Assembly: GCA_002269645.1 (NCBI GenBank)
Contig: NIVC01002718.1
Coordinates: 82,995-146,994, forward strand
Reading direction: 5' to 3'
Length of the DNA: 64,000 bases
Origin: Macrostomum lignano
Lineage: Eukaryota
Shown here: positions 2,987 through 59,488 of the stretch, in pieces
Layout of the letters: each line of letters starts with the position of its first letter
How positions within the stretch are numbered: the first letter of the stretch is position 1
The notes under the pieces: generated by a model
The model's database searches: none
Told to the model about the DNA's origin: nothing
Seen by the model: the letters and a program-made list of their open reading frames with translations, nothing else
Program-made: the position numbers and the translations under genes

Positions 2987-4162
2987 ATGCCAGTCTCCAC
3001 GTCGCCAAGCCCAACCAGCCCCGCCGGCGAGCATCAGCTGAGGCCGCGCCAGCGCCGCCAAGCCGCAGCGGCCTCTGGTGCAGCTACAGCCTCCGAGCCG
3101 GCGGTACGCGAGGACAGCGAGCAGAACAGCGGCGCCGAGGAGGACGGCGGCGGCGGCGAGCTGATGGACGAGGTTGTCAGCGACGCCAGCGCGCAGGACG
3201 AAGACGTCAGCGACGAAGAGGAGGAGGGCGAGCTGGTGGTGGACGCCGAGGCCGCCGCCTACGGAGAAGACGAGGATGGGGAAGAGAGCGGCGGCGGCGG
3301 GGAGGAGGGAGATGAGGAGGAGGACGGCAGTTCGAACGAGGCCGGGAACGGCCTGGGCGGGGGGGCTGATGGCGAAGACGAAGATGAAATCGAAGATGCT
3401 GAGGATGAGGAAGAGGAGGATGAGGAAGCAGCAGACGAAGCCGGTCAGCGTCGCCAAGGCGCAGCCGCCCCGTCGTCGCCCTTGACAACGCCGGCAGCAT
3501 CTGGCGGCGGCGTTGCCTGGCGTCGGGAGCCGCGCGTGGGCGCCGAATTCCAGGCTGCCGATTTGCCAGCGCCGAGCGCCAGGCAGGCCGCGGAGCCGCA
3601 GCCGGTGGACAGCCGTGCCGTCCTCCTGTGGGACCCCGGCCGCCTGCCAGAACCCGACGTTGTTGATTACCTTCGCCGAGCGCAGCCGGGCGTCAGCTTC
3701 CCGGCCGGCCGGGCCATCCCGGACAGCGAGCGCTGGCTGTTCGAGCTGCAGGCCTGCGGCTACTCGGCCACCGAGGCCCTCATGCGGGCCCGCGTCCGGC
3801 CGGACCTGCCGTGCCCGGACGTGCTGGCCATGTGGCCATCGGACGATGTTGATGCGTTCGAGAACGGCCTGCTGCACTACGGCAAGAATTTCTGGCTGGT
3901 GCAGTCGGAGCGGCTGCGCTGCCGGCCGGTTGGCCAGCTGGTGCATTTCTACTACCTGTGGAAGAAAACCGCCAGGCACGACGCTTTTGCCAGCCGTTTC
4001 CGGAGCCTCTGCCGGGCGGGCGGCGGCGGCGGTCACGGACAGCAGCAGCGGCAGCAGGCCACGGCGGCTGCTGCAGCGGCAACATCAGCTCCCAGGCCGC
4101 ATTCTCTTCTAGCTTCCTCACCGCCGCATCACCTGACCCAGCAGTACGCGGCCCGCAATTAG
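2987..4162 (+). CDS. MIER: MIER-family ELM2-SANT transcriptional corepressor (start may lie further upstream through splicing)
   Basis: Acidic N-terminal region, then ELM2 (WRREPRVGAEFQAADLP...LLWDPGRLPEPDVVDYL...FELQACGYSATEAL) and SANT (WPSDDVDAFENGLLHYGKNFWLVQSERLRCRPVGQLVHFYYLWKKT). This layout matches MIER1/2/3. ATG at 2987 is in frame with ORF 1865..4162, whose upstream part is repeat. Confidence 0.88.
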   Translation: MPVSTSPSPTSPAGEHQLRPRQRRQAAAASGAATASEPAVREDSEQNSGAEEDGGGGELMDEVVSDASAQDEDVSDEEEEGELVVDAEAAAYGEDEDGEESGGGGEEGDEEEDGSSNEAGNGLGGGADGEDEDEIEDAEDEEEEDEEAADEAGQRRQGAAAPSSPLTTPAASGGGVAWRREPRVGAEFQAADLPAPSARQAAEPQPVDSRAVLLWDPGRLPEPDVVDYLRRAQPGVSFPAGRAIPDSERWLFELQACGYSATEALMRARVRPDLPCPDVLAMWPSDDVDAFENGLLHYGKNFWLVQSERLRCRPVGQLVHFYYLWKKTARHDAFASRFRSLCRAGGGGGHGQQQRQQATAAAAAATSAPRPHSLLASSPPHHLTQQYAARN

Positions 4163-8900: not shown

Positions 8901-11900
8901 AGTGTCTGGTTGGTGAAGTGTCTGGTTGGTGAAGTGTCTGGTTGGTGAAGTGTCTGTTTGGTGAAGTGTCTGATTGGTGAAGTGTCAGGTTGGTGAAGTG
9001 TCTGGTTGGTGAAGTGTCTGGTTGGTGAAGTGTCTAGTTGGTGAAGTGTCTGGTTGGTGAAGTGTCTGGTTGGTGAAGTGTCTAGTTGGTGAAGTGTCTA
9101 GTTGGTGAAGTGTCTGGTTGGTGAAGTGTCTGGTTGGTGAAGTGTCTGGTTGGTGAAGTGTCTGGTTGGTGAAGTGTCTGGTTGGTGAAGTGTCTGGTTG
9201 GTGAAGTGTCGGTTTGTGAAGTTTGCGTTAAACCTCTGCTTAACTTGCATGGCAACCCCAGGTAAAGATTGCACAGAGTTAGAAGCGCACTTATTACAAT
9301 TAGTTTGGCAAGCCAGACATGAAATTAAGCAATTAGCATTTTGCTAAAATTGGCAACCTCCACTGGTCGCTTGCTGAGACGGCGCTGCTGTTGCTGCTGC
9401 AGTTGCGGCTGCTGCAGGTGGATCGGCGGCAGGGTGCTCAGCGGCAGTTGCTGCTGTTGCTGCAAGGTCGCCAGCATGGTGGACTCAGCGCTCAGCGGCG
9501 GCAGCGAGTGCCGACTCACCAGAGCTGGGCGATGCCTGCCGCCGGGTTCAGCAGCAGCGGGCGCCTCATCCTCGGCCTCGCCGCTTGGCAGCCCCTTCCG
9601 CCGCGGCCGCTCCCGCTGGTCGTCCGAAGAGCTGCTGTCGCCGGCAGCAGGCTCGGTCGATTCGGCCGAGGAAGGCCGGCAGGAGCCGCTGCCAACTCCG
9701 ACGCCGCTGTCGCGACGAACTGACTGTTTTGAAGCTGCCGCTGCAGCCTGTTAGTTTAAGGAGTTAAAATTCGCTACTCTCTACTAATATGTTAAAGTAA
9801 GTAGTATATACCGGTGTTATTACTAAAGTTTGCTATTTTAGAGCACGCGATTATTTTAGCAGTGTTAATTATGCTGTCAAGCGAAATTCAGTTTTTGGTT
9901 AGCCTCTCTCGTTGGCTCACTGTGGAACTATCGAAGTCCTGAAAGTTGAATTTGACTTCGTGCGTGCCCAGGTCAACATCTGCTGACTGCTTCTCCTCGG
10001 GAATGATGCAGGCCTCCGTCTTCAAGTCGTGCTGCAAGACGGGCTTTTGTATTCTGTTTATTGGCTCTTGGGGGCACGATGTACTTTTTCAGGGATGCGA
10101 AATCTGTCGGCTGATGGAAGCAGAGAGATAGCGGGCGGGGTGAGGTGACGGTAGAATGAATGTACAGTGCTAATGTACATTGGGGGGGTAGGAAAACAAG
10201 TGAAAGGGGGCCAATAAACAGCGGAAGGGGTGTCTGCGAGGAGATAACGATGCCTAATGATCCGGAGCAAAGTTATACCGGTGGAGGCTTAACTAGATTG
10301 ACCTAGTTAAAGGGCGCAGATTTCGCAGTTTTTTTAGTTCACCGAAGTCACGCGCCACATGAGCGCTATAAAGTGCAGGCGAGAATTAGTGGAAATGAAA
10401 ATTCAATGTAGCTACTCTGTGTGAAAGCAGATACAAATTCTTTGTTCTTATCGTTTTCTAATTAATTTTTTTCTTACAAATACGAGTAGATTATACTAGC
10501 AATTCATTCTAATCCTTTATCCATGATGCTGGCTAGATTAGCAATCCATTCTAATCCATCATTCATGATGCTGGCTAGATTAGCAATCCATTCTAATCCT
10601 TCATCCATGATGCAGGATAGATTAGCAATCCATTCTATTCCTTCATCTATGATGCAGGCTAGATTAGCAATCCATTCTAATCCTTCATCCATGATGCAGG
10701 CTAGATTAGCAATCCATTCTAATCCTTCATCCATGATGCAGGCTAGATTAGCAATCCATTCTATTCCTTCATCCATGATGCAGGCTAGATTAGCAATCCA
10801 TTCTAATCCATCATCCATGATGCAGGCTAGATTAGCAATCCATCATCCATGATGCAGGCTAGATTAGCAATCCATTCTAATCCTTCATCCATGATGCTGG
10901 CTAGATTAGCAATCCATTCTAATCCTTCATCCATGATGCAGTCTAGATTAGCAATCCATTCTATTCCTTCATCCATGATGCTGGCTAGATTAGCAATCCA
11001 TTCTAATTCTTTATCCATGATTTTGGCTAGATTAGCAATCCATTCTAATCCTTTATCCATGATTTTGGCTAGATTAGCAATCCATTCTAATCCTTTATCC
11101 ATGATTTTGGCTAGATTAGCAATCCATTCTATTCCTTCATCCATGATTTTGGCTAGATTAGCAATCCATTCTAATCCTTCATCCATGATTTTGGCTAGAT
11201 TAGCAATCCATTCTAATCCATCATCCATGATGCTGGCTAGATTAGCAATCCATTCTAATCCTTCATCCATGATGCAGGCTAGATTAGCAATCCATTCTAA
11301 TCCATCATCCATGATGCTGGCTAGATTAGCAATCCATTCTAATCCTTCATCCATGATGCAGGCTAGATTAGCAATCCATTCTAATCCATCATCCATGATG
11401 CTGGCTAGATTAGCAATCCATTCTATTCCTTCGCTGAGGTTTCCAAACTCCGGCGCCAATCCCAACGCGAAGACTCGAACCCGGGCCCTCACCGTGGACT
11501 GTCCAACGCTCTCCCGCCGCTCGGTGCGCAGTCCGGATGGCGAGCTGTGCAGGTTCAGCAGCACGGAGTTCCTGCGGTCGTGCCGGAAGTGCCGCCTCTC
11601 CTGGCTGTGAACGCTGGAGGCTGACATCACGGAGGCCTGCGGGACGGATGGAGCCAGCGGCAACTGAGCGCTACCGTAGCTCTCAGACGTCTCACCTGAC
11701 TACTGATACCAGCCTAAGTCTGTAGTCATCTTGAACACGAGCTGTCTTCCACCCCAGTCTCTCCCGCTGTATCCCGAATCCCACAGTCTGACCCGCCATC
11801 TCCTCCACTCCAACCTGTAGTCTCACCCGCTGTCTTCCCCTCCCGCCATGTAATTTCACCCGCCGTCTTCCCCTCCCCGCCATGCAGTCTCACCCGCCGT

Positions 11901-14900
11901 CTTCCCCTCCCCGCCATGCAGTCTCACCCGCCGTCTTCCCCTCCCCGCCATGCAGTCTCACCCGCCGTCTTCCCCTCCCCGCCATGCAGTCTCACCCGCC
12001 GTCCCGGCTCGGGCTGCGGTTCCTCGTCGCCCGCCTGTTGCTCCTCGTCCTCGGCGGGCTCCACCCGGCTGAAATGACGTCACGATTCGGATGAATGCTC
12101 GGCTTGAGTTCCGCGAGGACTTAAAAGAAGAGGAACCGAAACTCTATCCTCCTCTGTCCCCCGAGTCTCATCGTGCGGGACTCGGCATATTCAAACAGTA
12201 TCAGTTTAAAAGTACAAATTCTGGGCTTAGACCTTGTTTGTAACATTTTTGGTCAAGTTTGGATGACAGATTAGAGGGAGACAGGTAGCTAAGGATATTG
12301 ACGATAGGTCGTTAAGGAACTGGAAACGAAGGAGTGCGGCCTGCTTTAAGCGAGCCGGGGGATGGGGAAAACATTTTCCTATAAAGAGGCGGTCGGCGCG
12401 CGGGGTGAACTCGCGAGTACAGAGGGGACATTTCCTGGAAAGTCGCGGCAAAACTTTTCGAGGTTGTAAGTCGGGAGATAATTGGGGCTTCAAAGGGACG
12501 GATTGTTGGAGTGCGTCAGAATTCTTATTATTTGTATAGAAATTATAGGAGTAGTGACTCTATACATTAGGGAGTTAGCCACAGGTCGGCTTGGCAGTTA
12601 GAGGATTAGTCGCTTAGGTATTAGAGGATTAGTCGATTGTAGGTATTAGAGGACCAGTCGCTTATGTATTAGAGGATCAGTCGCTTAGGTATTAGAGGAT
12701 CAGTCGCTTAGGTATTAGAGGATTAGTCGCTTAGGTATTAGAGGACCAGTCACTTAGGTATTAGAGGATCAGTCGCTTAGGTATTAGAGGATCAGTCGCT
12801 TAGGTATTAGAGGATCAGTCGCTTGAGTATTAGAGGATCAGTCGCTTGGGTATTAGAGGATTAGTCGCTTAGATATTAGAGGATCAGTCGCTTGGGTATC
12901 AGAGGATTAGTCGCTTAGGTATTAGAAGATTAGTCGCTTAGATATTAGAGGATCAGTCGCTTGGGTATCAGAGGATTAGTCGCTTAGGTATTAGAAGATT
13001 AGTCGCTTAGATATTAGAGGATCAGTCGCTTAGGTATTAGAAGATTAGTCGCTTAGATATTAGAGGATCAGTCGCTTGGGTATCAGAGGATTAGTCGCTT
13101 AGGTATTAGAGGATCAGTCGCTTAGGTATTAGAGGATTAGTCGCTTAGATATTAGAGGATCAGTCGCTTGGGTATTAGAGGATTTGTCGCTTAGGTATTA
13201 GAAGATTAGTCGCTTAGGTATTAGAGGATCAGTCGCTTAGGTATTAGAGGATCAGTCGCTTGGGTATTAGAAGATTAGTCGCTTAGGTATTAGAGGATCA
13301 GTCGCTTAGGTAATAAAGCATTAGTTTAGGTATTAGGGATTAGAGTCCTAAGAACCTTAACAAACTGATTCTGCATTCTGCAGCAGAACATCTGTCTTCC
13401 AGAAGATAGGGCATTGCTACGCAGCTGTCAATCAAAAATTGGGCGTCACCAACCACTGGCAGCGGCACTTCTTCTCCAGCTCGGCCAGCTTGTTCATCAG
13501 CCTGGGGTTCAGGACCATCAGCACGATGTACACGATGTACAGAACCAGCAGGACCACAGCGTCCCAGATCTGCACTACCGAATCGTACATCATCACGATG
13601 AAGTAGATGATGGAGATCAGGTAAAAGATGGAGTCCCTGACTAGCGGTCTCCAGTCCAGGTGTAAAACCTGATGGTTGCGTGGGCGGTTGGAGATCTTTC
13701 TTAGCAGTTAGGGAATTTGGGATATTTAGTGTAATTTGGGATGTCTAAATGGTATTGGGGATATTTAGTGTAATTTGTAATGTCTAGATTGAATTGGGGA
13801 TATTTAGTGTAATTTGGGATGTCTAGATGGAACTGGGGATATTTAGTGTAATTTGAGATGTCTAGATGGAATTGGGGATATTTAGTGTAATTTGGGATGT
13901 CTAAATGGAATTAGGATATTTAGTGTAATTTGGTGTGTCCATATGGATTTGGGGATATTTTGATGCAATTGAAGAATATTTATTTATGCTCTATGTATTA
14001 TTTTGACGGAATCAAGGAATATTTCTGTGCAAATGAAAAAAAATTGAAAATTGGAGAAATAGCTCGTATATTAAGAATATTAGTTATGGGTAGGCTGCCT
14101 GGGTTGAAACGCGATTGAAACGCTCTACATTTGTCCGCCGTCACTGTCTATGGTTGAAGCATATTTCAATTATATTCAATTCATCACTTATAGCCACTGT
14201 ATATTTCACTGCCAACAAACAAAAGACCAAACACAACAGGAATCAAACACGAAGTAAACGAAATAATTCAGTAAATAACGCTTGGAAGCTCAAAATGATA
14301 TGTGGCTGGAGAGTTCATCAATAGTTACTTTAATAGTTACATCTGTCAGTTAGCGTGGTGTAATGTTGAATGTGCAATTCTCAAATTTGCATTTCTCAAA
14401 AACGCTCGCCTGGTTGGCACCAATCGATACGCCCTGGTTAGCTACAATTGACCCAGGCATGCCCAACGCAGTCGTATTTTGTGACAGTACGATGCATCCA
14501 GCAGTCGAACTTGCTCCCGCGTTGCTGGCGCTCTGACCAGCCGATGCCAGGGTTTGTTCCGCAGTGCCAGAGAGTCGCCCACTGATTGCTCGGGATAGGT
14601 TGACTTTTTTGGAGAACTTCAATCTCTTGTTGTAATGTTCAACGCTCTCCGCTCGTTTGTGACCGGTCACGGCTTGAATCTCGGAAACGCTGACGCCATC
14701 CTCCATCAAGTTGGTTACAACGGAGGCGCGTATGCAATGATTGGTGTGAGCACGATTGCTCAGTCCCGCCAGCTCACACAATTTCTTCATGAACTCATTA
14801 AGCCAGTGTTTGCCGAGTACAAGGCTCTTGTGATACCAGAAACCTTCCATGGAAAACCCTCGTTCCAGCGGTTTAGGCCACAGACAACCGACGTCATCTG

Positions 14901-17900
14901 GTATTTTTGCCAGGTACATCTCCATCGCACGAACCGGACACGTATTCGGGTCAGTCGGCGTTTCGGCCAAAATGATCGACTTTCGTGTGGTTGGGTCGTC
15001 CGCCGTTACTGTCTTCTCCACACCATCCTTCACCAAGTCGATATATCAAACTCCATCGCATTCGTCAATCCTCACGTCGGCCTTCGTCAATCCCCTCAGC
15101 CACTCACGGCCCCTGAAGCCGAATCCATACACGATTTTAAACAGAACCTCGAATTGTAGACGTGTCGGTGTCGTACGGTCGAAATACACACGCAGCCGAT
15201 GGAAGTCAGAGTCATCAATTGGACAGTACGTAGACGCATTGCCTATAGACGTTTTCTCCCTCAGAGCCGTCATCAGGCATGCCTTGTACGTCCGTTCAAA
15301 CGACAAAAATTCGGTGTTACCTATAATTCGCACGTTCCTTGTCTCCAGCACGTACCGATGAATAGACGCCCTGAAGCACACCAGACTTCGGACAGCGTAT
15401 GGCTTGCCTTCCTGAGTCCTCAGTGACACAAACCACAGCCGCATATAGGCACAAAGATAGCGGATCGGCATTGTTTCGATGTTGTCCGGCAGTTTCTGGT
15501 CCACCAGATATTTTTTGAAGCGCTTCACATGGAGAGCGGTTTGATCCGTGGTCGATTTGCGTTTGGCAGCCTCTTCGACGTCTTGCACAGCAGCTTCCTC
15601 TTCTTCCGTCAGTTCCCGCAGAAGCTCGGCATTATTCAGAATGCTTGGATTGGACAATTCTGCGTCAATCAACTCCTGCTGTCTTACGGTCACACCGGTC
15701 CACTGACTAACTTCTTCACCAGGATCACGATGGCAAAGTTGCTGCAGAAACTCAATCTCATTCATTTCTAAACCGCTAATATCTTCCTCTAGTATTGATT
15801 CCCAGTGAAACATGGCTAATTCCGAACCTTAAAGCTGTTTAAATCTTATTCTCTCTCCCACCCACCAAGAGAAGAATGGAGGAATCTAGCACGCTGACGA
15901 GTGCGTCAATGGCTGAAACACGAGTGCGCGTAGCGCACGAGGGTTTTTGCCATAGACGCACAAGTCAAAGTGCTTGATTCCCATTCTTATTTGATTCAAC
16001 ATGTGTGGCTAAAGTAGACAAGGGTGCAGCTGGGAGTGTGGAGTTAGACTTGAACCATAGAAAAAATATGCGCGAGCTAGTCTGAACATTCTTGCACGAT
16101 GGAAAGAAGACTATGCTTGTAGTCTATGGCTGTTATGCTAAATATAGAAACATTGCGCATTACATTCTTGCACGATTGACATTCCTGCACGGAGTGCACA
16201 TGCAAATTCAAGGTGCTTTTACCATAGACACTTGCATTTCTGCACGCATATGGCGACTTCCAAAGCATTCTTGCACGAGTGCGGGAATGACATCTGCACG
16301 AGTGCGCGCTAGCGCACGAGTGCACGATGTCCTTCACGCACGAGTGAACGTGAAGGAATTCCATTGTCGGATGATTCATCGTGCAGGAATGCACAAAACC
16401 GTGCAGGAATGCATTTCTGCGCCTAATGCTTTTTCAGTGAGATTTTACCATAGACATCCATTCCTGCACGCAAAAGAGTGCAAGAATGCCATTCTTGCAT
16501 GGAAAATCAGCCGACAATGCTTCAAACTCTATTTGGGTTTCAACCATAGACAGTCTCCGCGGACTGCGAAACCGCCACGAAGCATATAGCTAAAGCTTTT
16601 TCAACCATAGACAGTTTCTGTGGACGTGAAACCCATGGATGAATGAATAGAATGGATTGCTATTCTGGCTCTGGCTATTTTCGTTTTTGACTCTTTTGCA
16701 TCCGGTTCCCCCCGTGCCTTTTCATTGGTTGATGATTGCCATAGACAATTTTCGGCCTTCGCCCCTTTCTTTCGATGCACAAGCGCAAAGAACTGAGAAT
16801 TTCAACATCATCATCATATGGCAATCATCAACCAATGAAAAGGCACGGGGGGGGAACTGGATGCAAAAGAGTCAAAAACGAAAATAGCCAGAGCCAGAAT
16901 AGCAATCCATTCTATTCATTCATCCATGGTGAAACCGCGTTGTGCGTCCGCGCTTTAGCCTAACCCATAACGCGCCGAGGCTTTTCAGTTCATTTCAGTC
17001 CTCAGCAGCCAGTCTATATTAATATATTATGAATTGACCGTATTTTTTCTATATCTATGACTTTTGCGAGGATTTGAGACATATTTGCCTCGGAAGCACT
17101 GCAACTTCTTTATCGAAGTGGATTTTAACGAGAGACTCTTTCTTTATGGTCAAAATTTTCTAAGAAAGTTGCACTAATTAAAAATTCACCTTTCCCGCGA
17201 AAGCGGCAGTCAAAGAGATGATCACAAGCAGGTTGAAGACGGCGGAACTGAAATATTATAAAAATTCTCAGCAGATTAAAATAATTTGATTAAACTTTCT
17301 TGCCAACTGCCTGAGTCAGTCAAAGTCGAATCTGCATTTGATTACAACAGAGTAAATGAGGAATATGAGGGAGAGTTGATGAGGTAGATGGGGAGAGTAG
17401 ATGAGGGAGATGAAGGAGAGTAGATGATGGAGACGGGGAGAGTAGATGAGAAAGATGGAGGAGAGTAGATGGGAGAGATAGGGGAGAGTAGATGATGGAG
17501 ATAGGGAGAGTAGGTGAGGAAGACAGTGAGAGTAGATAAGGGAGACGGGGAGAGTAGATAAGGGAGACGGGGAGAGTAGATAAGGGAGACGGGGAGAGTA
17601 GATAAGGGAGACGGGGAGAGTAGATAAGGGAGACGGGGAGAGTAGATAAGGGAGACGGGGAGAGTAGATAAGGGAGACGGGGAGAGTAGATAAGGGAGAC
17701 GGGGAGAGTAGATAAGGGAGACGGGGAGAGTAGATAAGGGAGACGGGGAGAGTAGATAAGGGAGACGGGGAGAGTAGATAAGGGAGACGGGGAGAGTAGA
17801 TAAGGGAGACGGGAGAGTAGATAAGGGAGACGGGGAGAGTAGATAAGGGAGACAGTGAGAGTAGACGAAGGAGACAGTGAGAGTAGATGAGAGAGACGCA

Positions 17901-19942
17901 CCCAGCGATGGTGCCGACCCCGGCGTCAGAGTCGAAGGCCACGGCGGCCACTGAGCTGAACAGCTCGGGTGCTGAGCTGCCCGCCGCCATGAAGGTCGCG
18001 CCGGCCACGTCCTCCGAGAGGTTCAGCTTCTCCGAGATGATCTCCAGCGAGGGCACGAAGAAGTCGTCGCACACAATGGCCACGGCTGCGGGATGGGAGG
18101 AAAATCGGCTCTGGTGCACCTCTGACTGCACCTGTGACTGCACCTCTGACTGCACCTCTGACTGCACCTCTGACTGCACCTCTGACTGCACCTCTGACTG
18201 CACCTCTGACTGCACCTGTGACTGCACCTCTGACTGCACCTGTGACTGCACCTCTGACTGCACCTCTGACTGCACCTGTGACTGCACCTCTGACTGCACC
18301 TCTGACTGCACCTGTGACTGCACCTGTGACTGCACCTGTGACTGCACCTGTGACTGCACCTCTGACTGCACCTCTGACTGCACCTCTGACTGCACCTGTG
18401 ACTGCACCTCTGACTGCACCTCTGACTGCACCTCTGACTGCACCTCTGACTGCACCTCTGACTGCACCTGTGACTGCACCTCTGACTGCACCTCTGACTG
18501 CACCTCTGACTGCACCTCTGACTGCACCTCTGACTGCACCTCTGACTGCACCTGTGACTGCACCTCTGACTGCACCTCTGACTGCACCTGTGACTGCACC
18601 TCTCATCCACTAAATTAATCACCCATTGCCTTTTACACTTCTTTATTTCCTTCACCTAGAATCGCTGAAGTTAATCCCAATCTCAACCCGGCCTCAAGCA
18701 GACTGTTCGATAATCAATCCCCAAAAATTATCGCCCTTATATAATCATGAGAAGTGAAACTCTAGAACAACCGGTCAGGACCGCTGCTAACTGCAATTCT
18801 CAGATCGATTTAATCGGAAGCTCAGTGTTACATTTTTAGGCTAATCACTGTAAAGGAACTGCGCAAGAAGATAGCAGTATAATCCTGCATGAAATATAGC
18901 GTATTTTTCCTGGAAGCAGATTATGGCTCGCAGTTTATGGCCACGCCCTGTATGGGCATCACTTCCTGCACGATCGGCCACTTCCCGAAGTTCGCACAGG
19001 CAGAAGCGGCACACAGAGCCCCCCGCATAAAGTTTCATATTGCTTAATCTACCTTCGTAATCTTCTCTAATCCGCCTTGAGATAATCCCCTTAACTGCCG
19101 CCGTCTGCGGAGGCGCTCTTCATTGCACATCTACCCTCTGCCTAGCCCAAGAAACCTTAGAGGTCCTCTGTCAGATTTTCAGGAAATTTTCCTCCCTCGA
19201 TTTTCCGTTTTGCAGGCTGGTCTTGAGAGCTGAACCTCCTATAAAGTGAGACTCTGCAGGCTTGTCCACCGCCCAGCTACCCTCCCTTACAGCCTCGCGG
19301 TCGTCTTGACAACCTCGACAGAAAGAGGCTGCAATCAGTTTCCTATTTGAAAGATAGTTAGGAACTGTCTTCCCACCCCGCCTGCCTGAAGAGGCGGACA
19401 GACAGGCTAGAGAACTGCCTGCCCTTATTATTAGTAAAACCTCTTGGCCCCCGAGGGCCTTATAACGAGACAGTGCCGTTTAACCGGTAAATAAAGAAAT
19501 AGTTGCTATGCGTATATACATGTACAAGATTACTTTAACTTAGCGGCAGCTCAGGAAGGCAGCCCAGCCTACTCCAGCCTCGTGTTTAACGCCCAACCTC
19601 CTTCATCTCAAATGCCACTTAAAGGGAGGCTTGAACTGTAAGTTCCGCTTAGAGACGGAATCAAGTGGAATCAAGTGGAGAATAATCCTGTTTAATTAAG
19701 AGGCGTGTTGTAGAGGACTCAGAAGTGCGCAGCCTTCACTAAGGACTTCAAAGTCTCAGGCTAAATCGATGCTCGTGTACCTGTTAAATCTAGCATTTTT
19801 ATGCGCTGATGTACATCACTCACCGCTGAAGATGATGATGCTGCACACACACACTGATTTGTACCTCACTCACCGATGAATATCATGATGCTGCACACAC
19901 ATACTGATATGTACATCACTCACCGATGAAGATCATGATAGT

Positions 19943-24004: not shown

Positions 24005-24364
24005 GATTTAAAGACAGGGAGTAGGGAGCGAGAGGGGGATATTTGGTAGTGTGCATACGATCGTATATTGCATTACAATGCCCTTATTTTTTGCGAATGA
24101 AATTAGATCATGGAATTTTATTTGCTTAGCCGTAAAGGCCACAAAAGTGCACGGCTGACGCGCTCGATTTGTGCCGCAGATGCAGCACGGCCGGAAAGCA
24201 TTTTTATTGGCGATCGAAGACCCTAAACAGCCATTGATTCTGCTATTATGGCCTTTGAGTGGCTGGGAGGCGAAGACTATACAAGAAAGCAGCACACAGG
24301 AATGCCTGCTGATTGTAGCAATTCAGGGATGAACTGGCGATCGCGTATTGCACATGCATATGTA

Positions 24365-24371
24365 ATCTGTT

Positions 24372-24402
<31 letters not shown>

Positions 24403-24482
24403 TTGTCTGTTTGGTTGTCTGCCTGTCTGTCTGTCTGTTTGTCTGTCTATCTATCTATCTGTCTATCAATCAATCAATCAAT

Positions 24483-24513
<31 letters not shown>
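24365..24513 (+). repeat. Compound (TCTG)/(TCTA)/(TCAA) microsatellite
   Basis: Directly visible. Confidence 0.92.
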
Positions 24514-24514
<1 letters not shown>

Positions 24515-24515
24515 A

Positions 24516-25870
24516 TGAAGTGCATGGCAAATGCACTTAATAATTGTAGCCCATACTCGTACTTTGCAAGTTTCGTCCCCTTTTTATTACGTGCTAACTG
24601 TAGTAGTCCCCATTCACTTCATGTCCCCATGTCAGCGACCTGCTGGTGGCCGGGGATGCAAAGTGACGTCGACGCATTCGTGAGGCAGTGCTCGGGTTGC
24701 AATCAACTTAGACCGAGATTTGCCAAGGCCCGGGATGTCTGGCACCCATTTCAGTGAATTCACATGGACTGGGCATACATCAAGGACGCCGCGAACGTTC
24801 TCATTATCGTGGACGCCTTCTCTGGGTGGATTGAAGCATTCCCCTGTCCCAGTCGGTCGGGCGAAAACGTCATCGCTTCTTTGTGCACTGTGTTCACTCG
24901 GTTTGGCGTATCCGAAACTGTGGTGTCAGACAACGCTCCAGAATTCACAGGCGATCCTGTTGGGACCTGGCTGAAAGCTAACGGCGTGACAAAACTAGAA
25001 TCCCCTCCATACTATCCTCAAGCGAACGGAGCAGCGGAACGAGCGGTTCAAACCGTGAAGGCTGCACTGCGCTCCTGGACTGAGCGCATCACCCGTCTGC
25101 CGTTCATCCCTTTTCTGCAGAAGGTACTGATGCATCACCGCAACTCTGCCATGAGTCGAGGAAAAAGCCCGGCCGAGTTGGTTTTTGGACGAAAACTGCG
25201 GGTTCCCGTGGTTTCAGCGTTTGACCAAGGCGAGTCTGTGCTGTACAAACCATCCGATGCAGTTGGGCAGCCCGCGAAATTCCTGATGACCGCGGGACGC
25301 AACACAGCCTGGGTTTTGGCGAATGGCCGCCTACAGTTTGCTAGCACCAACCAAATCGCTCCATACCATGGTGCTGACATCGACGATGGCGAGGAGGAAG
25401 AGGATGATGCTACACCGGCAACGACCCTGGATGACGATGGACAGCATCCAACGTCTACGCTGAGACGAAGCTCACGCATTAGGCAGCAACCTAACAGATT
25501 TGCGCCATAAACTCGCAAACTAGCTAAGATTGACACTAGTTGGCGTGCGTTTACTATTTACTGACATATTTAAACTGTTTTGTTATGCTTGTCCAATGTT
25601 CCCATTTGGAGGGGGACATGAAGTGCATGGCAAATGCACTTAATAATTGTAGCCCATACTCGTACTTTGCAAGTTTCGTCCCCTTTTTATTACGTGCTAA
25701 CTGTAGTAGTCCCCATTCAATTATGTCTATGACCACGACCTTAAAACCCTCGTATTGCCTCCCCCGAGCGCGTCTTCTCTCTAAGTTTTTCTTCGGCCCA
25801 AAGCTTTCGTAATCGCATGACAAATAAAAAGCAATATCAACCATAAGAGATAATCTGCAACAAGACAAAT
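24516..25870 (+). mobile_element. Internally deleted Ty3/Gypsy element (partial 5' LTR, integrase, PPT, 3' LTR)
   Basis: 101-bp direct repeat at 24516-24616 and 25619-25719 beginning TG. Integrase CWWPGM…CSGC…F-Q-*-IHMDW…IIVDAFSGWIEA…VSDNAPEF…ANGAAERAVQTVK ends at 25510. PPT GGAGGGGGACA lies before 25619. The LTR 3' end is approximate. Confidence 0.85.
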
Positions 25871-30862: not shown

Positions 30863-46397
<15,535 letters not shown>

Positions 46398-49420: not shown

Positions 49421-52062
49421 AAAGTGTTGTAGAGTATATTTTTAAATTATGTTGCTTTATAGCACTGAGATCACATTGGATACCTAATTAGGAATAATAC
49501 CTAGATAATGGGATCTTTACTATCCCAGAAAATAAATGTTTTAGAGAAAATGAGATCTCTAATTAGGGATTATTACCTAGATAATGAGATCTCTAATAAG
49601 AGATTAATACAATACTAAGACTATAGATTAATATCTAGTTTTAACTTATTTCAATACTATAGAATTTCTGCTACTTAGGAAACCTTTTATTATATAGGCC
49701 TCATGTTATTAAAATTCATTATTCAATAAATAATTTGGAAACCAATGAAATATGACTTATATACTATTAAGGTCATATGTGCGCAACCTGGCCAATCTAG
49801 CCACTATAAATTGTGGTGGACTAGGGGTAAGTCACAAAAATTCCTACCTAAAAGAATAAACATAGTAATAATTAGATGGCAAGGCATTTAGCCTTAATAA
49901 GCCAGTCACAGTTACACCTTCTATTTACTCAAAATTGAGTTATTTTTTTGCAATAGGGTTTCTTTCATAGACAAGTTGCATTTTTGGTCAAAAAGTAAGT
50001 CCTATGGCTAGTATAAATCAGGGATATGGCATATGTATGATTAAGGTGATAATTAAAAGTTTTGGAGCAAAGTTAACAACTTGTGTTTTAGTAGATTTAA
50101 ATCATTAGTTTGGTTAGGAAAATATATTATGTTTCTCTTAATAAAAATAGTTATAATTAGTACAAAATAAGCAAAATATTTAAACAATATAAAATCTTTA
50201 TATCATTATAAAACAAGAGCCCGTTTACTTTTAGACCATAAAGTCAGATCATTTAATTTTAGAAAATAAATTATAAAAAATATAGTTTTGTAGATTTGTG
50301 CTATATTTCTTAAATTTAAAACCAAAAGGTAAAATCATAAATTTCTTATATACAAACAAAAAATAGAAAAAATTAGATACCAACAAACCATTTTTAGTAT
50401 ATTTAGATATTATTATCAATAAGCATTAGAAATGTTTCAAAACAGTTTTTGGAGTTTCTAAGTGCAGATTACAATTTAAAAAAAAATTAGAAATCAAAAT
50501 TTCAAAAAAGTCTAGTTCTAGCATCTTTTTAATTTTATATTTTTAAAGAATTTTATTGTTGTCTAATAAAATTATTTACAAGACAATTTTTCAAAAGTAT
50601 TTAGATTTGGTAAAACTATTTTGTAGTATTTTTTGGAATTGTAAATTAATATAATTTTATTATAATAAACAATTATATTCATATATCTTCATGAAAAAAT
50701 TATAAACATAATAAAATTATACTAGGCCTAACTCATTAAAAACCCAAAGCAAAATTTTATAAATAGACTACAAAAAACAACCTAAATTTGTGAATATTTA
50801 ACCTTCCTTGTTAATATGTTGATTATTTTTGTTTAAGTAATATGCACAAGTATCAAAGCCTAAGAATTCAAGAAAATTAATAACCATATCAAAATAGCCT
50901 AACTTAATAAGATATCTATAGGCCTATTCTATCTAAGAAACTATATATAAAGTAAGACATAAAGTTGGCTTTTAGTTAAAGTTGCTCGCTTAGCAAGTAA
51001 GATCAATAGGATTATAAGAAAGCAAAAATCAACATTAGCCTAAATCAAGTTATTGATCAATGTTCATTTGACTCCAAACTGCAGATACTTGAAGCACTGT
51101 ACATTAAAGTGCATTCCCCCCAACTTGAACACTCAACTCCAATACAATAATATAGGGTCACATGTTTTCCGTGTGTTCTAAGGGAAGAGGTACTAGATGT
51201 ACATTATTTACTTCTAACTATATCGCTAGGCCTATCATTCCATCCCTGGATTTTGCCTCTTGTCTTTTGGACCAACAAACATGTACTTTAAATATTTATT
51301 GAATTTATACCCTAAAATTTTGTATTTATTTACTGCCAATCTTAGGCCACTCGTTTCTTTTGCTCAAAAATAGGCCTAAACCTAAAGATGCACAGTATTA
51401 TGCGAAATGCATCATTCAATTAAATTTATTTAATGTTAAAGTTTGCTTTTAGATTGAGTTGTGCCTTTATTTCTATTATCAATGCTTAGTAATTCAATAA
51501 TTCTTCATTAGCATTTATTTTAGGCCTAGTATAATAGATTAGGCCTACATTTGATTTAGGTAAGGTAGCTATTACTTAGCTATTACCCCTCATCAGCAGC
51601 AGGGGGTTGGCCTAACCTAATCTTGTCCTGCAAGTTGCAATTGCAACTCGTTCTCTTAGCAAAGCAAAGTGAGAGAACCTGTCAGAATGTGGGAAACTAG
51701 GATTAGGCCTATGCTAAAATTGCCTATCACTCATAGGCCTATACTGAGGACTTGGAAGGTGCTAGGAATTGCATATAAGAGGGATATTTTAGGGCTTAAT
51801 TTTGAGCTGATCTGATTTGGGCTTATTTAGCCCAACCCAACCCAAGAAATTGGGCCAATCTGCCCCCTACTTTAGTTTAAAATTCCTAGATCCACATCCG
51901 CCACTGGCTTGTTTGGAAACAAAAAAGAACTAACTTTTGATATTATTAATCATAATGGAAGCATTAGAGAAACATCATTGGTGTTGCTTAAGGCAGAGGT
52001 TGGCGAAGCATTAATTAGGCTTATTAAATGGTAATATGGTGATTAAAATTCCTCTATTATAC

Positions 52063-52441
52063 GGGTCTCCCTAAAACACGCCCCGCACCGCCCTGCAGCG
52101 CTACACATTAAAACAAATTGGACTATAACTGAAGACACTTCAAAATGCGTTTTCTGTTAAGCTTCAAAGTTTTATTAAATTAAGTTTGTTTACTATGAAA
52201 TATGAAATTCGGTGAAAAATAAGTGATATTATTAATAATTTTAATAAAAAATTAATAATATAATTTTATAATGAAAACGAGAATATAAAAAATAATAACA
52301 ATATTTATAATAATAATTAAAGATATTTATTCCATTACTCGTACAACAAATAGTTTTCTTTGCAATCAAATACTGCATTGACAAAAAATGTTATAATGTG
52401 TAGCGGTTCGGGGCGGTGCGGTGCGTGTTTTAGGGAGACCC
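52063..52441. mobile_element. MITE with 52-bp TIRs and 9-bp TSD (Mutator/MULE-like, or Merlin)
   Basis: TIRs 52063-52114 and 52390-52441 match at 47 of 52 positions and start GGGTCTCCCTAAAA. CTATTATAC is duplicated exactly at 52054-52062 and 52442-52450. Confidence 0.88.
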
Positions 52442-55400
52442 CTATTATACTGTTTTGAAGTTTCAAAGAAAACGAATTTAAAAAATCAAACTTGCGCGAG
52501 AAAATGAGATTGGTTCGTTTTACCTTGCGAACTTTCTTCAACCATATAAATTTTGTTTACTCTAGACGGAAATTCTAACTATAGGAGCGAGCTATAGGGA
52601 GAAAAGCGACTGTTGTCAATAACACTGAAAACGAAAAAATTAAAGCGATTTTTTGTTGCAGAAAGTAGTGTTCCCAGGGAGATCAGAAGTGGGAGTCTGG
52701 TGTTCCTGGACTTGGCTCTTCTGAAGGATACTCAAGGACTACTAGACGAAGTGTTCCTAGTGGTCCTTAAGGATACTATAAATAAGTCGCCCCGGCCATC
52801 ATTCTCGACTCCCCACATGACTTGAGCTACGTTATTTGCAGTGATGATTTTCCAGTTAGTAAGATGACAATTCTTTGTGGAAGTTTTGAGCTGGGGTTCT
52901 GAATGGTTAAAGAAATCTGATAAGTTTAATTGCAATCGGGCAATTCAATGCTTATTTTCATTCGCAACAGGCATTCCGCCATTCCGTCAGGGAAATCTGT
53001 GTGTCCTGTCCTGCAGCGTCTGCTATCCGACGTGGTGGAACTACTGGACCGCCTAAAATCTAAAACGGCTTGCTGAGACGTGCGTCTGCTGCATGGTTTG
53101 GGTAGACATGCAGAAACTGAACTATGCAGCGTATATCTTCCACTAGTAGTAGCAGCTGAATAAGTAGAGTCTGGACGGAGTTGCATGCAGAAGAGAATGC
53201 GACTCAGGCCCGGTGTTGCCAGATTTCATCTAGTCGTATTCATGATGGACGCGCCAAAGTTATTTATGGTGTCAAGTGCTTTAATGCGCTGTCCACGGGT
53301 GCGACAAATGTTAAATCAGCAGAACCTATACATGTACATGTAGCCAGCAGCCTCAGATGCTGTGTCTTGAGTGCCACTATATAAAAGTAACACCTTGCGC
53401 GTGTAGGCGCAGATTGGAAAGACGACAACATTCGGTGTGAAGCCAGCGCGGCAATTCTACTACTTTGGTATTAGTAGAATAAGTTCCCAGCTGAAGTTGT
53501 TAGGTTTGATTTCGTTGTTGAGCTCTAGTAAAAGATCCCCATATTTTTATAGCGATCCCAATTGTATATACTGCACCAGTTGTGCAAGGGCCCTGTCAAG
53601 TGGGGGCGCACTCACGCAGCTGCCAAAGACTAGAGACTAACATTCCAGTGGTCCTTGCATGTAACTGTTCGGCTCACCCAAGCCGGGTTGGAGTGCAGGT
53701 TCGTGACTATGTGCTGTCATTTAGTCGTACCCGATTTATTTGCAATACTAGGAAAACCACCGCCGATAAAATGCAGTCAACCCGGATTAACGAAGATCTT
53801 TTCAACTAGTCGACGCTCTGAATGTTTCGATCCGCATCCGAGGGGCACGGTACAGAGACCGCCATGGGGGGGGGGCTTGCGTGACCTTGGTCATCACATT
53901 GGGGGCCAAGAGCTGAAGCCTGGTTGCTTAATTGTAACGGTCCAATGGTGCTCCCCGACGTTCCACGTGAGACGTACGCACAGTATTTTAACTTTCTGTC
54001 GTCGTCTTTCTTCTGGCTGCCAACGTCGCGCCATTAGATGAAGTGGAGCGCACACAAACCAAATTGCGACACTACGCGCACCGTCTTGAACCGTTGTACT
54101 GGAGGTAGGCTCTGACGTACAATGTGCTCACACCTGCTCACGACCTGCTCACAAAGTCGTTGACAGGCCGGTAGAAAGGCTGCGTGGCTGAGAAGCCGCT
54201 GGACGTATGATACACTTGTACAATCCTTTTTATTACAGATCGTGAGGGGCAATGTATCACTTTCCTGGGTGCAGTTGGCTTTTAGACGCTTGCAAAGCGA
54301 GCTCATAAAAGACAACAAGCGTGCAAACGATCGCAACGCGCCGACGAGCAACCAGGTAGACCTATTCATGATAGACTTAACTGTTATCGCTTTGATCAAC
54401 TATAGCCCATGGCCCATTTCCGTGAAGCTGATAACAACAATTGCACGCATGTAATTAGTTGGCATTTAGCTAACACGCTACGGGCAGACCAGCCCGTTTT
54501 ACGCCCTTCATCATGTCGAATAGGGTGTTCTTGCATGGAACCCGCGTAGACAATTACCCTCAGTCAACTCCGTCGTTTTAGAGTCGCAGACAATAAAACA
54601 GCGACTCTTTGAGGACTTCTTCCCGACTTGTACTGCGACATCTCGTCGTTATTAAAGTTGTATTAGAGTCCTATTTTCCAATTTTACCTTTTGTCATCCG
54701 CAACGACTCTGAAGCGACTCTGGAGCGACGCAAAATGACACTGGTACGCTTCTTGGCCTTTGGCACCGTTTTTATCGGTTTAACTGCAGTTACTAATGCA
54801 GATATTTTTCAAAACCTGCAGGCCCCTCCTTTTTATATTCGCCCCAAAACAACTAAAATACTGTCTTGCGTTTTTGACAAATCGCTGTGACACTTGTTGC
54901 TTTATCAAAGACTGTGTATTAAAGTCCAAGAAGAACGCAGAGGCCGTCTTTAAAGCGAGTACGTCTGTCTAAAACACAGATCCTAAAATTGTGGTCTGTG
55001 GTCTAAAGGCCGGATTGATTTCATATGGTGTCTCAACTATAGACATAAAATTGAGTTATTTTTAACACGAGTAATTGGACCAATGCATGTTTATGAAACC
55101 AAAATCGTTGACCGTAAGATCCCGATAATCTAAACGGCTGACGCGCGCAAACTTGTTAAGGAGGAGACCAACAACCGTAATTGTTATACTGACCTCGTCC
55201 GCTTGCCAAGATACCACGATTCACAAATACCATAGGTGTTTTAAAACGGTTTAGTTTTTTGAAAGTGGAATAACGGTGGCTATAAATACTACTAAGAGCA
55301 ATACCAAGGAAGTAGAAGAACGAAACAATTTTAAAGAGATGGGGAAAGAACCCGTCACAACTTGTTGTCTGTCAGCTGTAAAGCTAAAATTTTTAAATTA

Positions 55401-58700: not shown

Positions 58701-59488
58701 CAAGCTGAATTTGTTCCCTATCTACAGCGATTGCTGTTTCATCACCGAAACTCATCCACGAGTAGGGGCAAGACGCCAGCTGAGATTGTTTTCGGACGCC
58801 AACTACGCGCTCCTGTAGTCTCCACGCTCAACCAAGGCGAGCACGTTCTGTATCAGCCAACTTCGGACGTTCCACCCTCCACTGTCGAATACGGGATGAA
58901 CCGAGGCCGCAACACAGCCTTCGTGTTGGACGGGAGCGAACTGCGTTTGGCAAGCGACAACCAACTCGCTCCACTGCCACACGACGATGAAGAATCAATA
59001 GCAGGAGATCCCGCAGACACGGAGGCAGGGAACGCCAGCGACAATTCGACCCAAGGCGCGCAAGTACAAGAAGCAGGTGGAATTCGCCGTAGCACCCGGA
59101 TGCGTCGCCAACCAGACCGCTACTCCTCATGACTGCTAAAAAACCGCATTAGCTACACATTACGAACCAAAATGAAACCTGACACGCTGAATTTGAATTA
59201 GTTATCTGTTAAGTTCCTAACATAAAGTTTACATTGTTCGGAAACATAGTTCAACTCTTTCCTTCTGGAGGGACACATGACATACGCTCGTGCAATAGTC
59301 TATGGCCGCTGCGCCCAAATGCCGCCTCCCTCATCCCTTCCTAATATATAAGTGTTTATAAATTAATCTTGTTCGTAATCTTGTTACAAGCCACGCTATC
59401 ATTAATGTGGTCCTAAAGCCAAATAAACAAGCAAAGCAAGATACGAGCTTCGTTATTCAAGCACTAGAGTTGCCATCTGAGCATCACA
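55720..59488 (+). mobile_element. 5'-truncated Ty3/Gypsy LTR retrotransposon (gag-PR-RT-RH-INT, PPT, 3' LTR), inactivated
   Basis: CCHC knuckles CGYCGQVH…C and protease VDTGAAVSVI. RT has YQDD; RNase H has TDAS…NYSNIEREALA…TDHKPL; integrase has HHCC and DDE regions to 59132. In-frame stops at 55892 and 56426, frameshifts near 57766 and 58023. PPT GGAGGGACACA is followed by a putative LTR TG(59278)…CA(59488). No 5' LTR seen. Confidence 0.92.

What the first reader, a model, noticed from the sequence alone, without database searches (positions are those of the whole stretch)
10499..16933. A 42-bp minisatellite unit is the terminal segment of a foldback element beside the Crypton recombinase
Seen: the array variant GGCTAGATTAGCAATCCATTCTATTCCTTCATCCATGATGCA aligns without gaps to 16892-16933 (AGCCAGAATAGCAATCCATTCTATTCATTCATCCATGGTGAA) at 36 of 42 positions. 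That stretch is the outer end of the foldback's right arm plus 4 nt. The array (about 22 copies, intron 7) and the element (intron 4) lie 5.5 kb apart in the same gene. Known: TE ends can seed satellites, and tyrosine recombinases excise circles. Inference: the end of a non-autonomous, possibly Crypton-mobilised element was amplified head-to-tail, perhaps through a minicircle and rolling-circle step. If general, this could help explain the private intronic minisatellites of this genome.
Basis: partly seen in the sequence, partly recalled or inferred. Interest (0 to 1): 0.75.

Follow-up and report, generated by a model that had tools for sequence, protein, structure and literature searches.

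The report
Minisatellite built from a foldback end
A 42-bp intronic minisatellite in a flatworm ion-exchanger gene is built from the outermost ~37-40 bp of a small foldback mobile element that lies 5 kb away beside a Crypton recombinase gene; this is a clean example of a known route from transposon end to tandem repeat, not a new mechanism.

Summary
The array (10497-11432, 22.5 x 42 bp) matches the outer end of both foldback arms. Ungapped 42-mer scores are 36 and 33, against 25 for the next best site in the window. An 18-mer is found only in the array and the two arms.

The foldback proper is 16634-16928 (arms 110/112 nt, one mismatch and one 2-nt indel). It is flanked by an 8-bp direct repeat, GTGAAACC, that occurs nowhere else in the 64 kb. 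It therefore looks like an insertion, lying 8 bp outside a repeated Crypton end motif.

A mobile-element end giving rise to a minisatellite is a known kind of event (Tetris/TIR-220, Xmix/Xstir).

Not supported:
- Minicircle or rolling-circle origin. Array variants are spatially clustered, and one unit carries a slippage-type 10-bp deletion.
- More element sequence at the array ends.
- Generality. None of the 24 other minisatellites in the window matches any non-array sequence.

Unresolved: which enzyme moved the foldback. An 8-bp duplication with long inverted arms fits a cut-and-paste MITE. However, five distinct Crypton relatives from metagenomes carry a ~100-nt palindrome upstream of their recombinase gene. 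In four of them it directly abuts an inverted end motif, the position the foldback occupies here.

The source genome (a macrostomid-like flatworm) could not be searched.

The parts
10497..11432 (+). 42-bp minisatellite, 22.5 units. Each unit is about 37-40 nt homologous to the outer end of the foldback arm (internal to terminal reads left to right on the + strand), followed by 2-5 nt of filler (ATG / ATGCW).
10825..10856 (+). Short (32-bp) unit lacking 10 bp between two ATCCAT subrepeats, a slippage-type deletion inside the array.
   Evidence: TRF 32-bp period at 10805-10875
16634..16928 (.). Foldback element proper (295 bp): CATGGATGAATG...CATTCATCCATG. Non-coding, single copy in the window.
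16634..16743 (+). Left arm (110 nt). Its first 37 nt (16634-16670) are the reverse-complement match to the array unit.
16744..16816 (.). Unpaired centre (73 nt). The Crypton signature motif CCATAGACA (16739-16747) straddles the arm/centre boundary.
16817..16928 (+). Right arm (112 nt). Its last 37 nt (16892-16928) are the direct match to the array unit.
16626..16633 (+). GTGAAACC, left copy of the 8-bp flanking direct repeat (target-site duplication or crossover core).
   Evidence: exact 8-mer occurs only at these two places in 64 kb
16929..16936 (+). GTGAAACC, right copy of the flanking direct repeat.
14350..15813 (-). Crypton tyrosine-recombinase reading frame (488 codons) with one in-frame TGA at 15046-15048. 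Pfam Phage_integrase plus a sub-threshold match to DUF3504.
16600..16625 (+). Crypton end motif X (TTCAACCATAGACAGTTTCTGTGGAC), 8 bp from the foldback. A tandem second copy lies at 16539-16564.
14133..14158 (+). X', the inverted copy of X at the 3' end of the Crypton (85-88% complementary). The closest relative L021 carries the same motif downstream of its recombinase gene.
16296..16326 (.). Crypton's own small palindrome (GAGTGCGC-GCTA-GCGCACGAG), homologous to the centres of the ~100-nt palindromes of related Cryptons.
16362..16519 (.). Second, imperfect palindrome in the Crypton 5' region (arms 80-89% complementary, z = -5.6).

Best explanation
The 42-bp minisatellite is a head-to-tail amplification of the outermost ~37-40 bp of one arm of a small foldback mobile element. 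The element at 16634-16928 is a young copy of that family: 295 bp, near-perfect arms of 110/112 nt, flanked by an 8-bp duplication GTGAAACC.

Shown:
- The homology and its extent.
- Homology ends at the element terminus.
- The flanking duplication.
- The foldback sits inside the terminal region of a Crypton.
- Array variation is spatially structured.

Inferred:
- An end fragment of another, more diverged copy of the family was left in or brought to the intron. The unit differs from this copy at 4-7 of 37 positions, whereas this copy's arms differ by one mismatch and one indel.
- A first duplication took in the end plus 2-5 nt of neighbouring sequence.
- The array then grew by ordinary replication slippage and unequal exchange. 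The same processes evidently fill 23% of this window with unrelated minisatellites.

The enzyme that moves the foldback is not settled. A cut-and-paste (DDE) transposase acting on a MITE and the tyrosine recombinase of the Crypton lineage are about equally compatible with what can be seen in one window.
For: - Homology: (scores 36 and 33 against a background maximum of 25; exclusive 18-mer).
- Insertion status: GTGAAACC occurs exactly twice in 64 kb, at the two edges. The Crypton's 3' inverted end has no foldback at the matching position.
- Young copy: arms differ by 1 mismatch and a 2-nt indel.
- Local turnover in the array: mean differences between units rise from 2.05 at lag 1 to 3.6 at lag 5, five adjacent units share TT, and there is one slippage deletion.
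- Known precedent for arrays derived from inverted-repeat or MITE ends: PMC4079207, PMC9659126, PMC12628747.
- Classical MITEs with target-site duplications exist in this genome: 52063-52441 has a 9-bp duplication.
Against: - The array flanks hold no further element sequence, so an in-situ origin from an element inserted at that spot is not demonstrated.
- Only one foldback copy and one array are available. Family status, copy number and direction of descent rest on inference.
- The outer 5 nt of the unit match the foldback's flank at 3/5. This is chance level, but it does not exclude descent from this very copy.
- The genome could not be searched. External DNA scans returned only 21-nt chance hits, array peptides found nothing, and no window protein is on record.
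Confidence: 0.6

Rival explanations
1. The foldback is a palindromic module of the Crypton lineage, moved or integrated by the tyrosine recombinase. On this reading a circle carrying an 8-bp core GTGAAACC recombined into the same core next to the Crypton's end motif. The array is then an amplified recombinase-recognised end, possibly made through a circular intermediate.
For: - Five distinct related Cryptons from metagenome contigs carry a 90-110-nt near-perfect palindrome upstream of the recombinase gene. In four of them it directly abuts a motif X whose inverted copy X' is the 3' terminus.
- Three identical copies of one of these elements show that the palindrome is the 5' end of the element.
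- Two contigs hold different units in direct tandem, the second starting exactly at the first's 3' end.
- In the window the foldback lies 8 bp outside X (16600-16625), the same relative position.
- CCATAGAC occurs 8 times within 14146-16746, once inside the foldback, against 1.7 expected in the whole window.
- The foldback shares more 8-10-mers with the Crypton non-coding DNA than about 96% of control segments.
- In the circle the two arms would flank an 8-bp spacer, the general layout of tyrosine-recombinase sites (PMC3212892).
Against: - The foldback termini are absent from the Crypton, and Smith-Waterman similarity is at shuffle level. Known non-autonomous Cryptons share both ends with their parent, and animal Cryptons are reported without terminal repeats.
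- The relatives' palindromes have 4-nt GTTA loops and 45-55-nt arms, with no 8-bp flanking repeats. Their sequence counterpart in the window is 16296-16326, not the foldback.
- The target flanks do not resemble the foldback ends.
- Nothing in the array points to a circle: units are 42 bp, not the 303 bp of element plus core, and variation is locally clustered.
- My probabilities: Crypton-related foldback about 0.35-0.4; the full chain including rolling circle about 0.1.
Confidence: 0.12
2. The satellite came first. A pre-existing 42-bp tandem repeat family supplied one unit that was captured at the end of a sequence later duplicated in inverted orientation to make the foldback.
For: MITEs that captured pre-existing tandem repeats have been proposed (miDNA4 of Xenopus; PMC12628747). 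The genome makes minisatellites at a very high rate.
Against: - Each arm holds less than one unit and no partial neighbouring unit.
- The homology ends at the element terminus, next to the flanking duplication.
- The terminal bases are those a mobile element needs for recognition.
- Both arms carry the segment identically.
- No second array of this unit is in the window.
Confidence: 0.1
3. The similarity is coincidental. In a window with 25 minisatellites, one unit happens to resemble some unique sequence.
For: There are many arrays, so many chances.
Against: The unit scores 36 and 33 of 42 against a background maximum of 25 over about 98,000 positions. An exact 18-mer is shared. BLAST E = 1e-6 for the 29-nt core. 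The match falls exactly on the terminus of both arms.
Confidence: 0.01

Closest known systems
Tetris foldback transposon and its TIR-220 satellite in Drosophila virilis (PMC4079207)
   Same: A non-autonomous foldback element whose inverted-repeat sequence is also found as stand-alone tandem arrays. Element to satellite is the inferred direction.
   Different: In Tetris the repeats are ~220 bp, lie inside the arms as internal tandem repeats, and form kb-size arrays in heterochromatin. Here the unit is 42 bp and is the extreme outer end of the arm. The arm itself has no internal tandem repeat, and the single array is in an intron.
Xmix MITE / Xstir tandem repeats of Xenopus, and other MITE-derived satellites listed in PMC9659126 and PMC12628747
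   Same: Part of a MITE is amplified head to tail. MITE, array and composites coexist in one genome.
   Different: No composite (element plus array) form is seen here, and the array flanks lack element sequence. Family-wide data are missing.
Cut-and-paste MITEs with 8-bp target-site duplications (hAT or P-type)
   Same: Small, non-coding, long terminal inverted repeats, 8-bp flanking duplication. The terminus CATGGATGAATGAATAG resembles the 17-nt P-element end CATGATGAAATAACATA (string seen in PMC2895639) at 12 of 17 positions with one gap. This is a lead only.
   Different: No transposase partner and no second copy are available. The terminus does not fit the usual hAT end consensus as I recall it. 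The arms are unusually long (110 nt of 295).
Non-autonomous Cryptons (CryptonI-1N1_RPro, CryptonA-1N1_OL; PMC3212892)
   Same: Lies next to a Crypton recombinase gene and contains one copy of that Crypton's repeated motif.
   Different: Known derivatives share several hundred bp of both ends with the parent and have no inverted or direct terminal repeats. This foldback shares neither end with the adjacent Crypton and has both kinds of repeat.

Membership tests
MITE (non-autonomous cut-and-paste DNA transposon) | Terminal inverted repeats | tested here: met
   Arms 110/112 nt, 1 mismatch and a 2-nt indel
MITE (non-autonomous cut-and-paste DNA transposon) | Target-site duplication of fixed length flanking the element | tested here: met
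   GTGAAACC on both sides, the only two exact copies in 64 kb. The boundary is ambiguous between 6 and 8 bp because the terminal C/G could belong to either. A recombinase crossover core would look the same.
MITE (non-autonomous cut-and-paste DNA transposon) | Small and without coding capacity | tested here: met
   295 bp. Only short spurious ORFs up to 76 aa cross it. No Rfam family.
MITE (non-autonomous cut-and-paste DNA transposon) | Many copies at unrelated sites, each with its own duplication, and an autonomous partner with the same ends | not testable with these tools
   Single copy in the window. The source genome is absent from every searchable collection.
Non-autonomous Crypton | Shares its 5' and 3' terminal sequences with an autonomous Crypton | tested here: not met
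   No similarity of the foldback ends to 13960-17100 outside the foldback. Best local alignment is at shuffle level, 63-68 of 300 shuffles. Only the adjacent Crypton could be tested.
Non-autonomous Crypton | No terminal inverted repeats in animal Cryptons (PMC3212892) | tested here: not met
   The foldback is almost entirely inverted repeat. However, relatives of this Crypton do carry terminal palindromes, so the published rule may not hold for this lineage.
TE-derived tandem repeat (Tetris/TIR-220, Xmix/Xstir type) | Array unit homologous to a defined part of a mobile element | tested here: met
   37-40 of 42 nt match the arm terminus
TE-derived tandem repeat (Tetris/TIR-220, Xmix/Xstir type) | Intermediate forms: arrays attached to element sequence, or short repeats inside elements | tested here: not met
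   Array flanks 10350-10496 and 11433-11580 show no foldback similarity above shuffles. The arms hold no internal 42-bp periodicity. One locus only.
Drosophila-type Foldback (FB) elements | Long arms built of tandem subrepeats; 9-bp duplication | tested here: not met
   TRF finds no tandem repeat in 16634-16928. The flanking repeat is 8 bp. The family features are from my own knowledge.
Crypton (the adjacent gene) | Tyrosine recombinase of the Crypton / DUF3504 type as the only enzyme | tested here: met
   Phage_integrase E = 7e-9. DUF3504 matched only below the curated cut-off (17.9 bits against 29.7, E = 0.0035). Homologues carry PF00589, PF12012 and QRICH1. This copy has one in-frame stop.

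The most novel reading that the evidence does not exclude
The foldback is the first example of a palindromic, non-coding element moved by a Crypton tyrosine recombinase. On this reading the lineage uses a terminal hairpin-forming palindrome next to an inverted end motif as its recombination substrate. The foldback integrated by recombination at the 8-bp core GTGAAACC beside that motif. The 42-bp array is then an amplified recombinase-recognised end. The sub-claim that the array arose through a circle or rolling-circle step is much less likely, about 0.05.
Probability: 0.25. Interest if true: 0.75.

Novelty: new member of a known kind. Interest (0 to 1): 0.38.

Why it matters
As it stands, this is a tidy, datable example of a mobile-element terminus becoming an intronic minisatellite, in a flatworm genome where about a quarter of this window is minisatellite. 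It shows that element ends are one seed among many in this window, not a general source of its arrays.

The more interesting by-product concerns Cryptons, whose ends and recombination sites are poorly defined. A lineage of Crypton relatives shows a consistent layout: a terminal ~100-nt palindrome, an adjacent motif X, the recombinase gene, then the inverted X' at the 3' end. Different units also insert in tandem. The window's foldback sits in the palindrome's position. If the foldback proves to be a recombinase substrate, it would give a minimal cis element for studying Crypton transposition.

Tried and rejected
- **Exact-pattern scans.** I scanned metagenome, prokaryotic-genome and viral collections with AWTAGAATGGATTGCTAWTCT. 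The 16 hits were 21-nt matches in Saprospiraceae/Chitinophagales-type contigs that do not extend. Chance.
- **Array peptide search.** I searched the array's two open frames as peptides against the protein collection, to find other arrays called as ORFs. No hit. Uninformative, because the organism is not represented.
- **Exact look-up of window ORFs.** A Crypton ORF and two retroelement ORFs were looked up to find the source assembly. None is on record.
- **Array flanks against the foldback.** Nothing above shuffles. A 16-nt patch, TGCAGGCGAGAATTAG (10374-10389), resembles the unit junction (7/500 shuffles, uncorrected) and was left as unexplained.
- **Rfam on 10000-17500.** No family.
- **Foldback as an integral part of the Crypton.** Rejected as least likely. 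The arms are far more perfect than the Crypton's own palindromes and X/X' pair. The 8-bp repeat flanks it. The sequence homologue of the relatives' palindrome is elsewhere (16296-16326).
- **Assembly artefact.** Rejected. The foldback is short, internal to the contig and flanked by a duplication.
- In one search my joined 'empty site' removed 2 nt too many. One search uses the correct join and gives the same picture.
- **P-element-like terminus.** Kept only as a lead, not as evidence.
Full report
**The observation**

Tandem Repeats Finder reports an array at 10497-11432 with period 42, 22.5 copies and 92% matches. The 18-mer TAGCAATCCATTCTATTC, allowing two mismatches, occurs at 22 places in the array and once in each arm of the foldback and nowhere else, with none expected by chance. 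I scored the unit without gaps against every non-array position of the window on both strands. The two arm ends score 36 and 33 and the next best site scores 25. BLAST gives E = 1e-6 for the 29-nt core. The similarity is real.

Inside the element it covers 37 nt without gaps (30-33/37 per unit), or 39 nt with one gap.

**The foldback**

- The inverted repeat spans 16633-16929.
- The arms are 110 and 112 nt and differ by one mismatch and a 2-nt indel. The centre is 73 nt.
- As single-stranded DNA it folds at -142 kcal/mol, z = -31.
- It is bracketed by GTGAAACC at 16626-16633 and 16929-16936. This 8-mer occurs exactly twice in the 64 kb.
- Taking the 8-bp repeat as flank, the element proper is 16634-16928, CATGGATGAATG...CATTCATCCATG. 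Six or seven bp are possible readings, because the terminal C/G can be assigned either way.
- There is no other copy in the window, no coding capacity and no Rfam match.

**Context**

Both features lie in introns of one minus-strand gene for a K+-dependent Na+/Ca2+ exchanger. Its exons map at 18086-17901, 17246-17187, 13677-13438, 11636-11484, 8659-8303, 8018-7833, 6964-6794 and 6153-5935. The closest named proteins are from Macrostomum lignano, 66-87% identical over individual exons where the match is good, so the window probably comes from a macrostomid-like flatworm. For M. lignano, simple and tandem repeats are reported as 15% of the genome (PMC5730564). In this window, arrays with period >= 12 occupy 23.4%.

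The foldback lies in the non-coding 5' region of a Crypton. This is a 488-codon tyrosine-recombinase frame at 15813-14350 with one in-frame TGA. It matches Phage_integrase (E = 7e-9) and, below the curated cut-off, DUF3504 (17.9 bits against 29.7).

The Crypton has a 26-nt motif X (TTCAACCATAGACAGT...GGAC) at 16539-16564 and 16600-16625, and its inverted copy X' at 14133-14158. Its core CCATAGAC occurs 8 times between 14146 and 16746, against 1.7 expected in the whole window. With the foldback and one GTGAAACC removed, the right end aligns with the inverted left end across the insertion point. The closest relative, L021, shares the X'-type motif downstream of its gene. The foldback is therefore an insertion into the Crypton's terminal region, 8 bp outside X.

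(a) More element sequence at the array ends: none. The flanks 10350-10496 and 11433-11580 align to the foldback no better than shuffles.

(b) Generality: I searched doubled consensus units of 25 minisatellites against the array-masked window. Only the 42-bp unit hit distant non-array sequence. One other hit is a decayed unit adjacent to its own array.

(c) Mode of amplification:
- Unit variants are spatially clustered. Mean pairwise differences are 2.05 at lag 1 and 3.6 at lag 5.
- Five adjacent units share a private TT.
- The last five units alternate in an 84-bp pattern.
- One unit lacks 10 bp between two ATCCAT subrepeats.

This is the signature of slippage and unequal exchange. It does not exclude a different founding event, but nothing requires a circle. 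A rolling circle on the element would give 303-bp units, not 42-bp units.

(d) Descent from this copy: the unit differs from the arm at 4-7 of 37 positions while the two arms are almost identical. The array therefore descends from another, more diverged copy or relative of the family.

**Who moves the foldback?**

On its face it is a MITE: long inverted arms, an 8-bp flanking duplication and no genes. The window holds a second classical MITE (52063-52441) with a perfect 9-bp duplication CTATTATAC, so such elements are active in this genome. The foldback termini are absent from the Crypton, and local alignment is at shuffle level. Known non-autonomous Cryptons share both ends with their parent, and animal Cryptons are described as lacking terminal repeats (PMC3212892).

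Fetching the Crypton's relatives changed the balance. The protein search gave eight homologues at 37-55% identity, and their contigs were retrieved.
- Five distinct elements carry a 90-110-nt near-perfect palindrome upstream of the recombinase gene: L017 units 1 and 2, L018 unit 1, L018 unit 2 (= L019 = L020, with a variant in L022), and L023. DNA hairpins have z = -12 to -14.
- In four of the five, the centre is stem-GTTA-stem, and the stem sequences differ in a compensatory way.
- Three identical copies at different sites show that one such element begins exactly at the outer edge of the palindrome and ends at ...GCGTGAGAAT.
- In four elements the 16-18 nt directly after the palindrome are the reverse complement of the 3' terminus, 17/17 to 18/18 in three of them and 16/17 in L018 unit 1. 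In a circular form the palindrome would therefore be extended by X' and X.
- L017 and L018 each hold two different units in direct tandem. In L018 the second unit starts where the first ends.

In the window, the sequence homologue of the relatives' palindrome centre is at 16296-16326 (16/18 to L018 unit 1). A second imperfect palindrome lies at 16362-16519. The foldback is a third. It lies 8 bp outside a full X copy, the same relative position as the palindromes of the relatives. It also contains CCATAGACA once and shares more 8-10-mers with the Crypton's non-coding DNA than about 96% of control segments.

Against a recombinase origin:
- The relatives' palindromes have no 8-bp flanking repeats.
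- Their arms and loops are much shorter.
- The target flanks do not resemble the foldback ends.

I therefore regard the DDE-MITE reading and the Crypton-related reading as roughly equally probable (about 45% and 35-40%). The version in which the foldback is an integral part of this Crypton copy is the least likely.

**Comparison with what is known**

Mobile-element inverted repeats and MITEs are documented sources of tandem repeats: Tetris/TIR-220, Xmix/Xstir and others (PMC4079207, PMC9659126, PMC12628747). This case differs in three details. The unit is the extreme outer end of the arm rather than an internal repeat. It is only 42 bp. No composite forms are visible. It is a new member of a known kind.

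**Limits**

The source genome could not be reached. External DNA scans gave only chance hits. The array's open frames found no proteins. Exact look-ups of window ORFs found nothing. Copy number, other termini, other arrays and empty sites therefore remain untested. These are the decisive data.

**Verdict**

The core inference, that an element end seeded the minisatellite, is likely. The rolling-circle origin and the general role for this genome's minisatellites are unsupported. Crypton mobilisation is open, with new circumstantial support from the relatives. Interest is moderate to low for the array itself. It is higher for the palindrome-X...X' layout of this Crypton lineage, which I could not find described in the Crypton survey I read.

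Noticed in passing
L017:225-345 and 2078-2095; L018:129-232, 2053-2191, 3968-3984; L019:152-274; L020:121-243; L023:100-219 and 2027-2044: Crypton relatives from metagenome contigs (GC ~37%) share one layout. A ~100-nt terminal palindrome, with a stem-GTTA-stem centre and compensatory stem changes in four of five elements, is directly followed by a 16-18-nt motif whose inverted copy is the 3' terminus. Two contigs hold different units in direct tandem. The Crypton survey PMC3212892 reports no terminal repeats in animal Cryptons.
   Followed up: partly
window 14146-16746: The 8-mer CCATAGAC occurs 8 times in and around the Crypton's non-coding DNA (12 in the window, 1.7 expected). Other repeated motifs are GCACGAGTGCRCG (6 copies) and CATTCTTGCACGA / CGTGCAGGAATG. 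These are candidate recombinase-binding sites.
   Followed up: partly
window 41287-41455: A second, gene-less cluster of Crypton-type motifs. A 20-nt inverted pair has CCATAGAC in each arm (41287-41306 / 41357-41376). It is followed by ACCACAGACAGTCTCGGCGGGCGTGAAATACC, which resembles X plus the GTGAAACC target. It may be a remnant or non-autonomous relative of the Crypton, and it has no foldback.
   Followed up: partly
window 52054-52450: A 379-bp MITE-like element (52063-52441) in an AT-rich stretch. Its terminal inverted repeats begin GGGTCTCCCTAAAACACGC, and it has a perfect 9-bp target-site duplication CTATTATAC.
   Followed up: partly
window 17369-18603: The NCKX exon at 17901-18086 is hemmed in by two minisatellites, 22 bp x 24 ending at 17898 and 12 bp x 41 starting at 18115. 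Arrays come within a few bases of splice sites. Overall 25 arrays of period >= 12 fill 23.4% of the window, and many are open in several reading frames.
   Followed up: no
window 10374-10389: TGCAGGCGAGAATTAG, about 110 bp upstream of the array, resembles the unit-to-unit junction TGCAGGCTAGATTAG (7 of 500 shuffles score as well). It may be a relic of the founding duplication or chance.
   Followed up: no
L023:1878-1935: Inside a related Crypton, a 21-bp x 2.8 tandem repeat (CGGGCCGGTAAATGAGATTTC) shares a 13-mer (TAAATGAAATTTC) plus CGGGC with the inner arm of that element's terminal palindrome. This is a small-scale parallel to 'palindrome-arm sequence repeated in tandem'.
   Followed up: partly
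window 24248-25727 and 55898-59132; 63151-63888: LTR-retrotransposon material. A full pol region (protease/RT at 56519-57775, integrase at 58023-59132) lies with a gag-like ORF at 55898-56428. A second integrase fragment (24764-25510) is flanked by 111-nt direct repeats (24515-24625 / 25618-25727, 98%). An RNase H-like ORF lies on the minus strand at 63151-63888.
   Followed up: no
window 50001-52000: A sharp drop in G+C to 28.6% over about 2 kb, in a window that otherwise runs at 42-68%.
   Followed up: no
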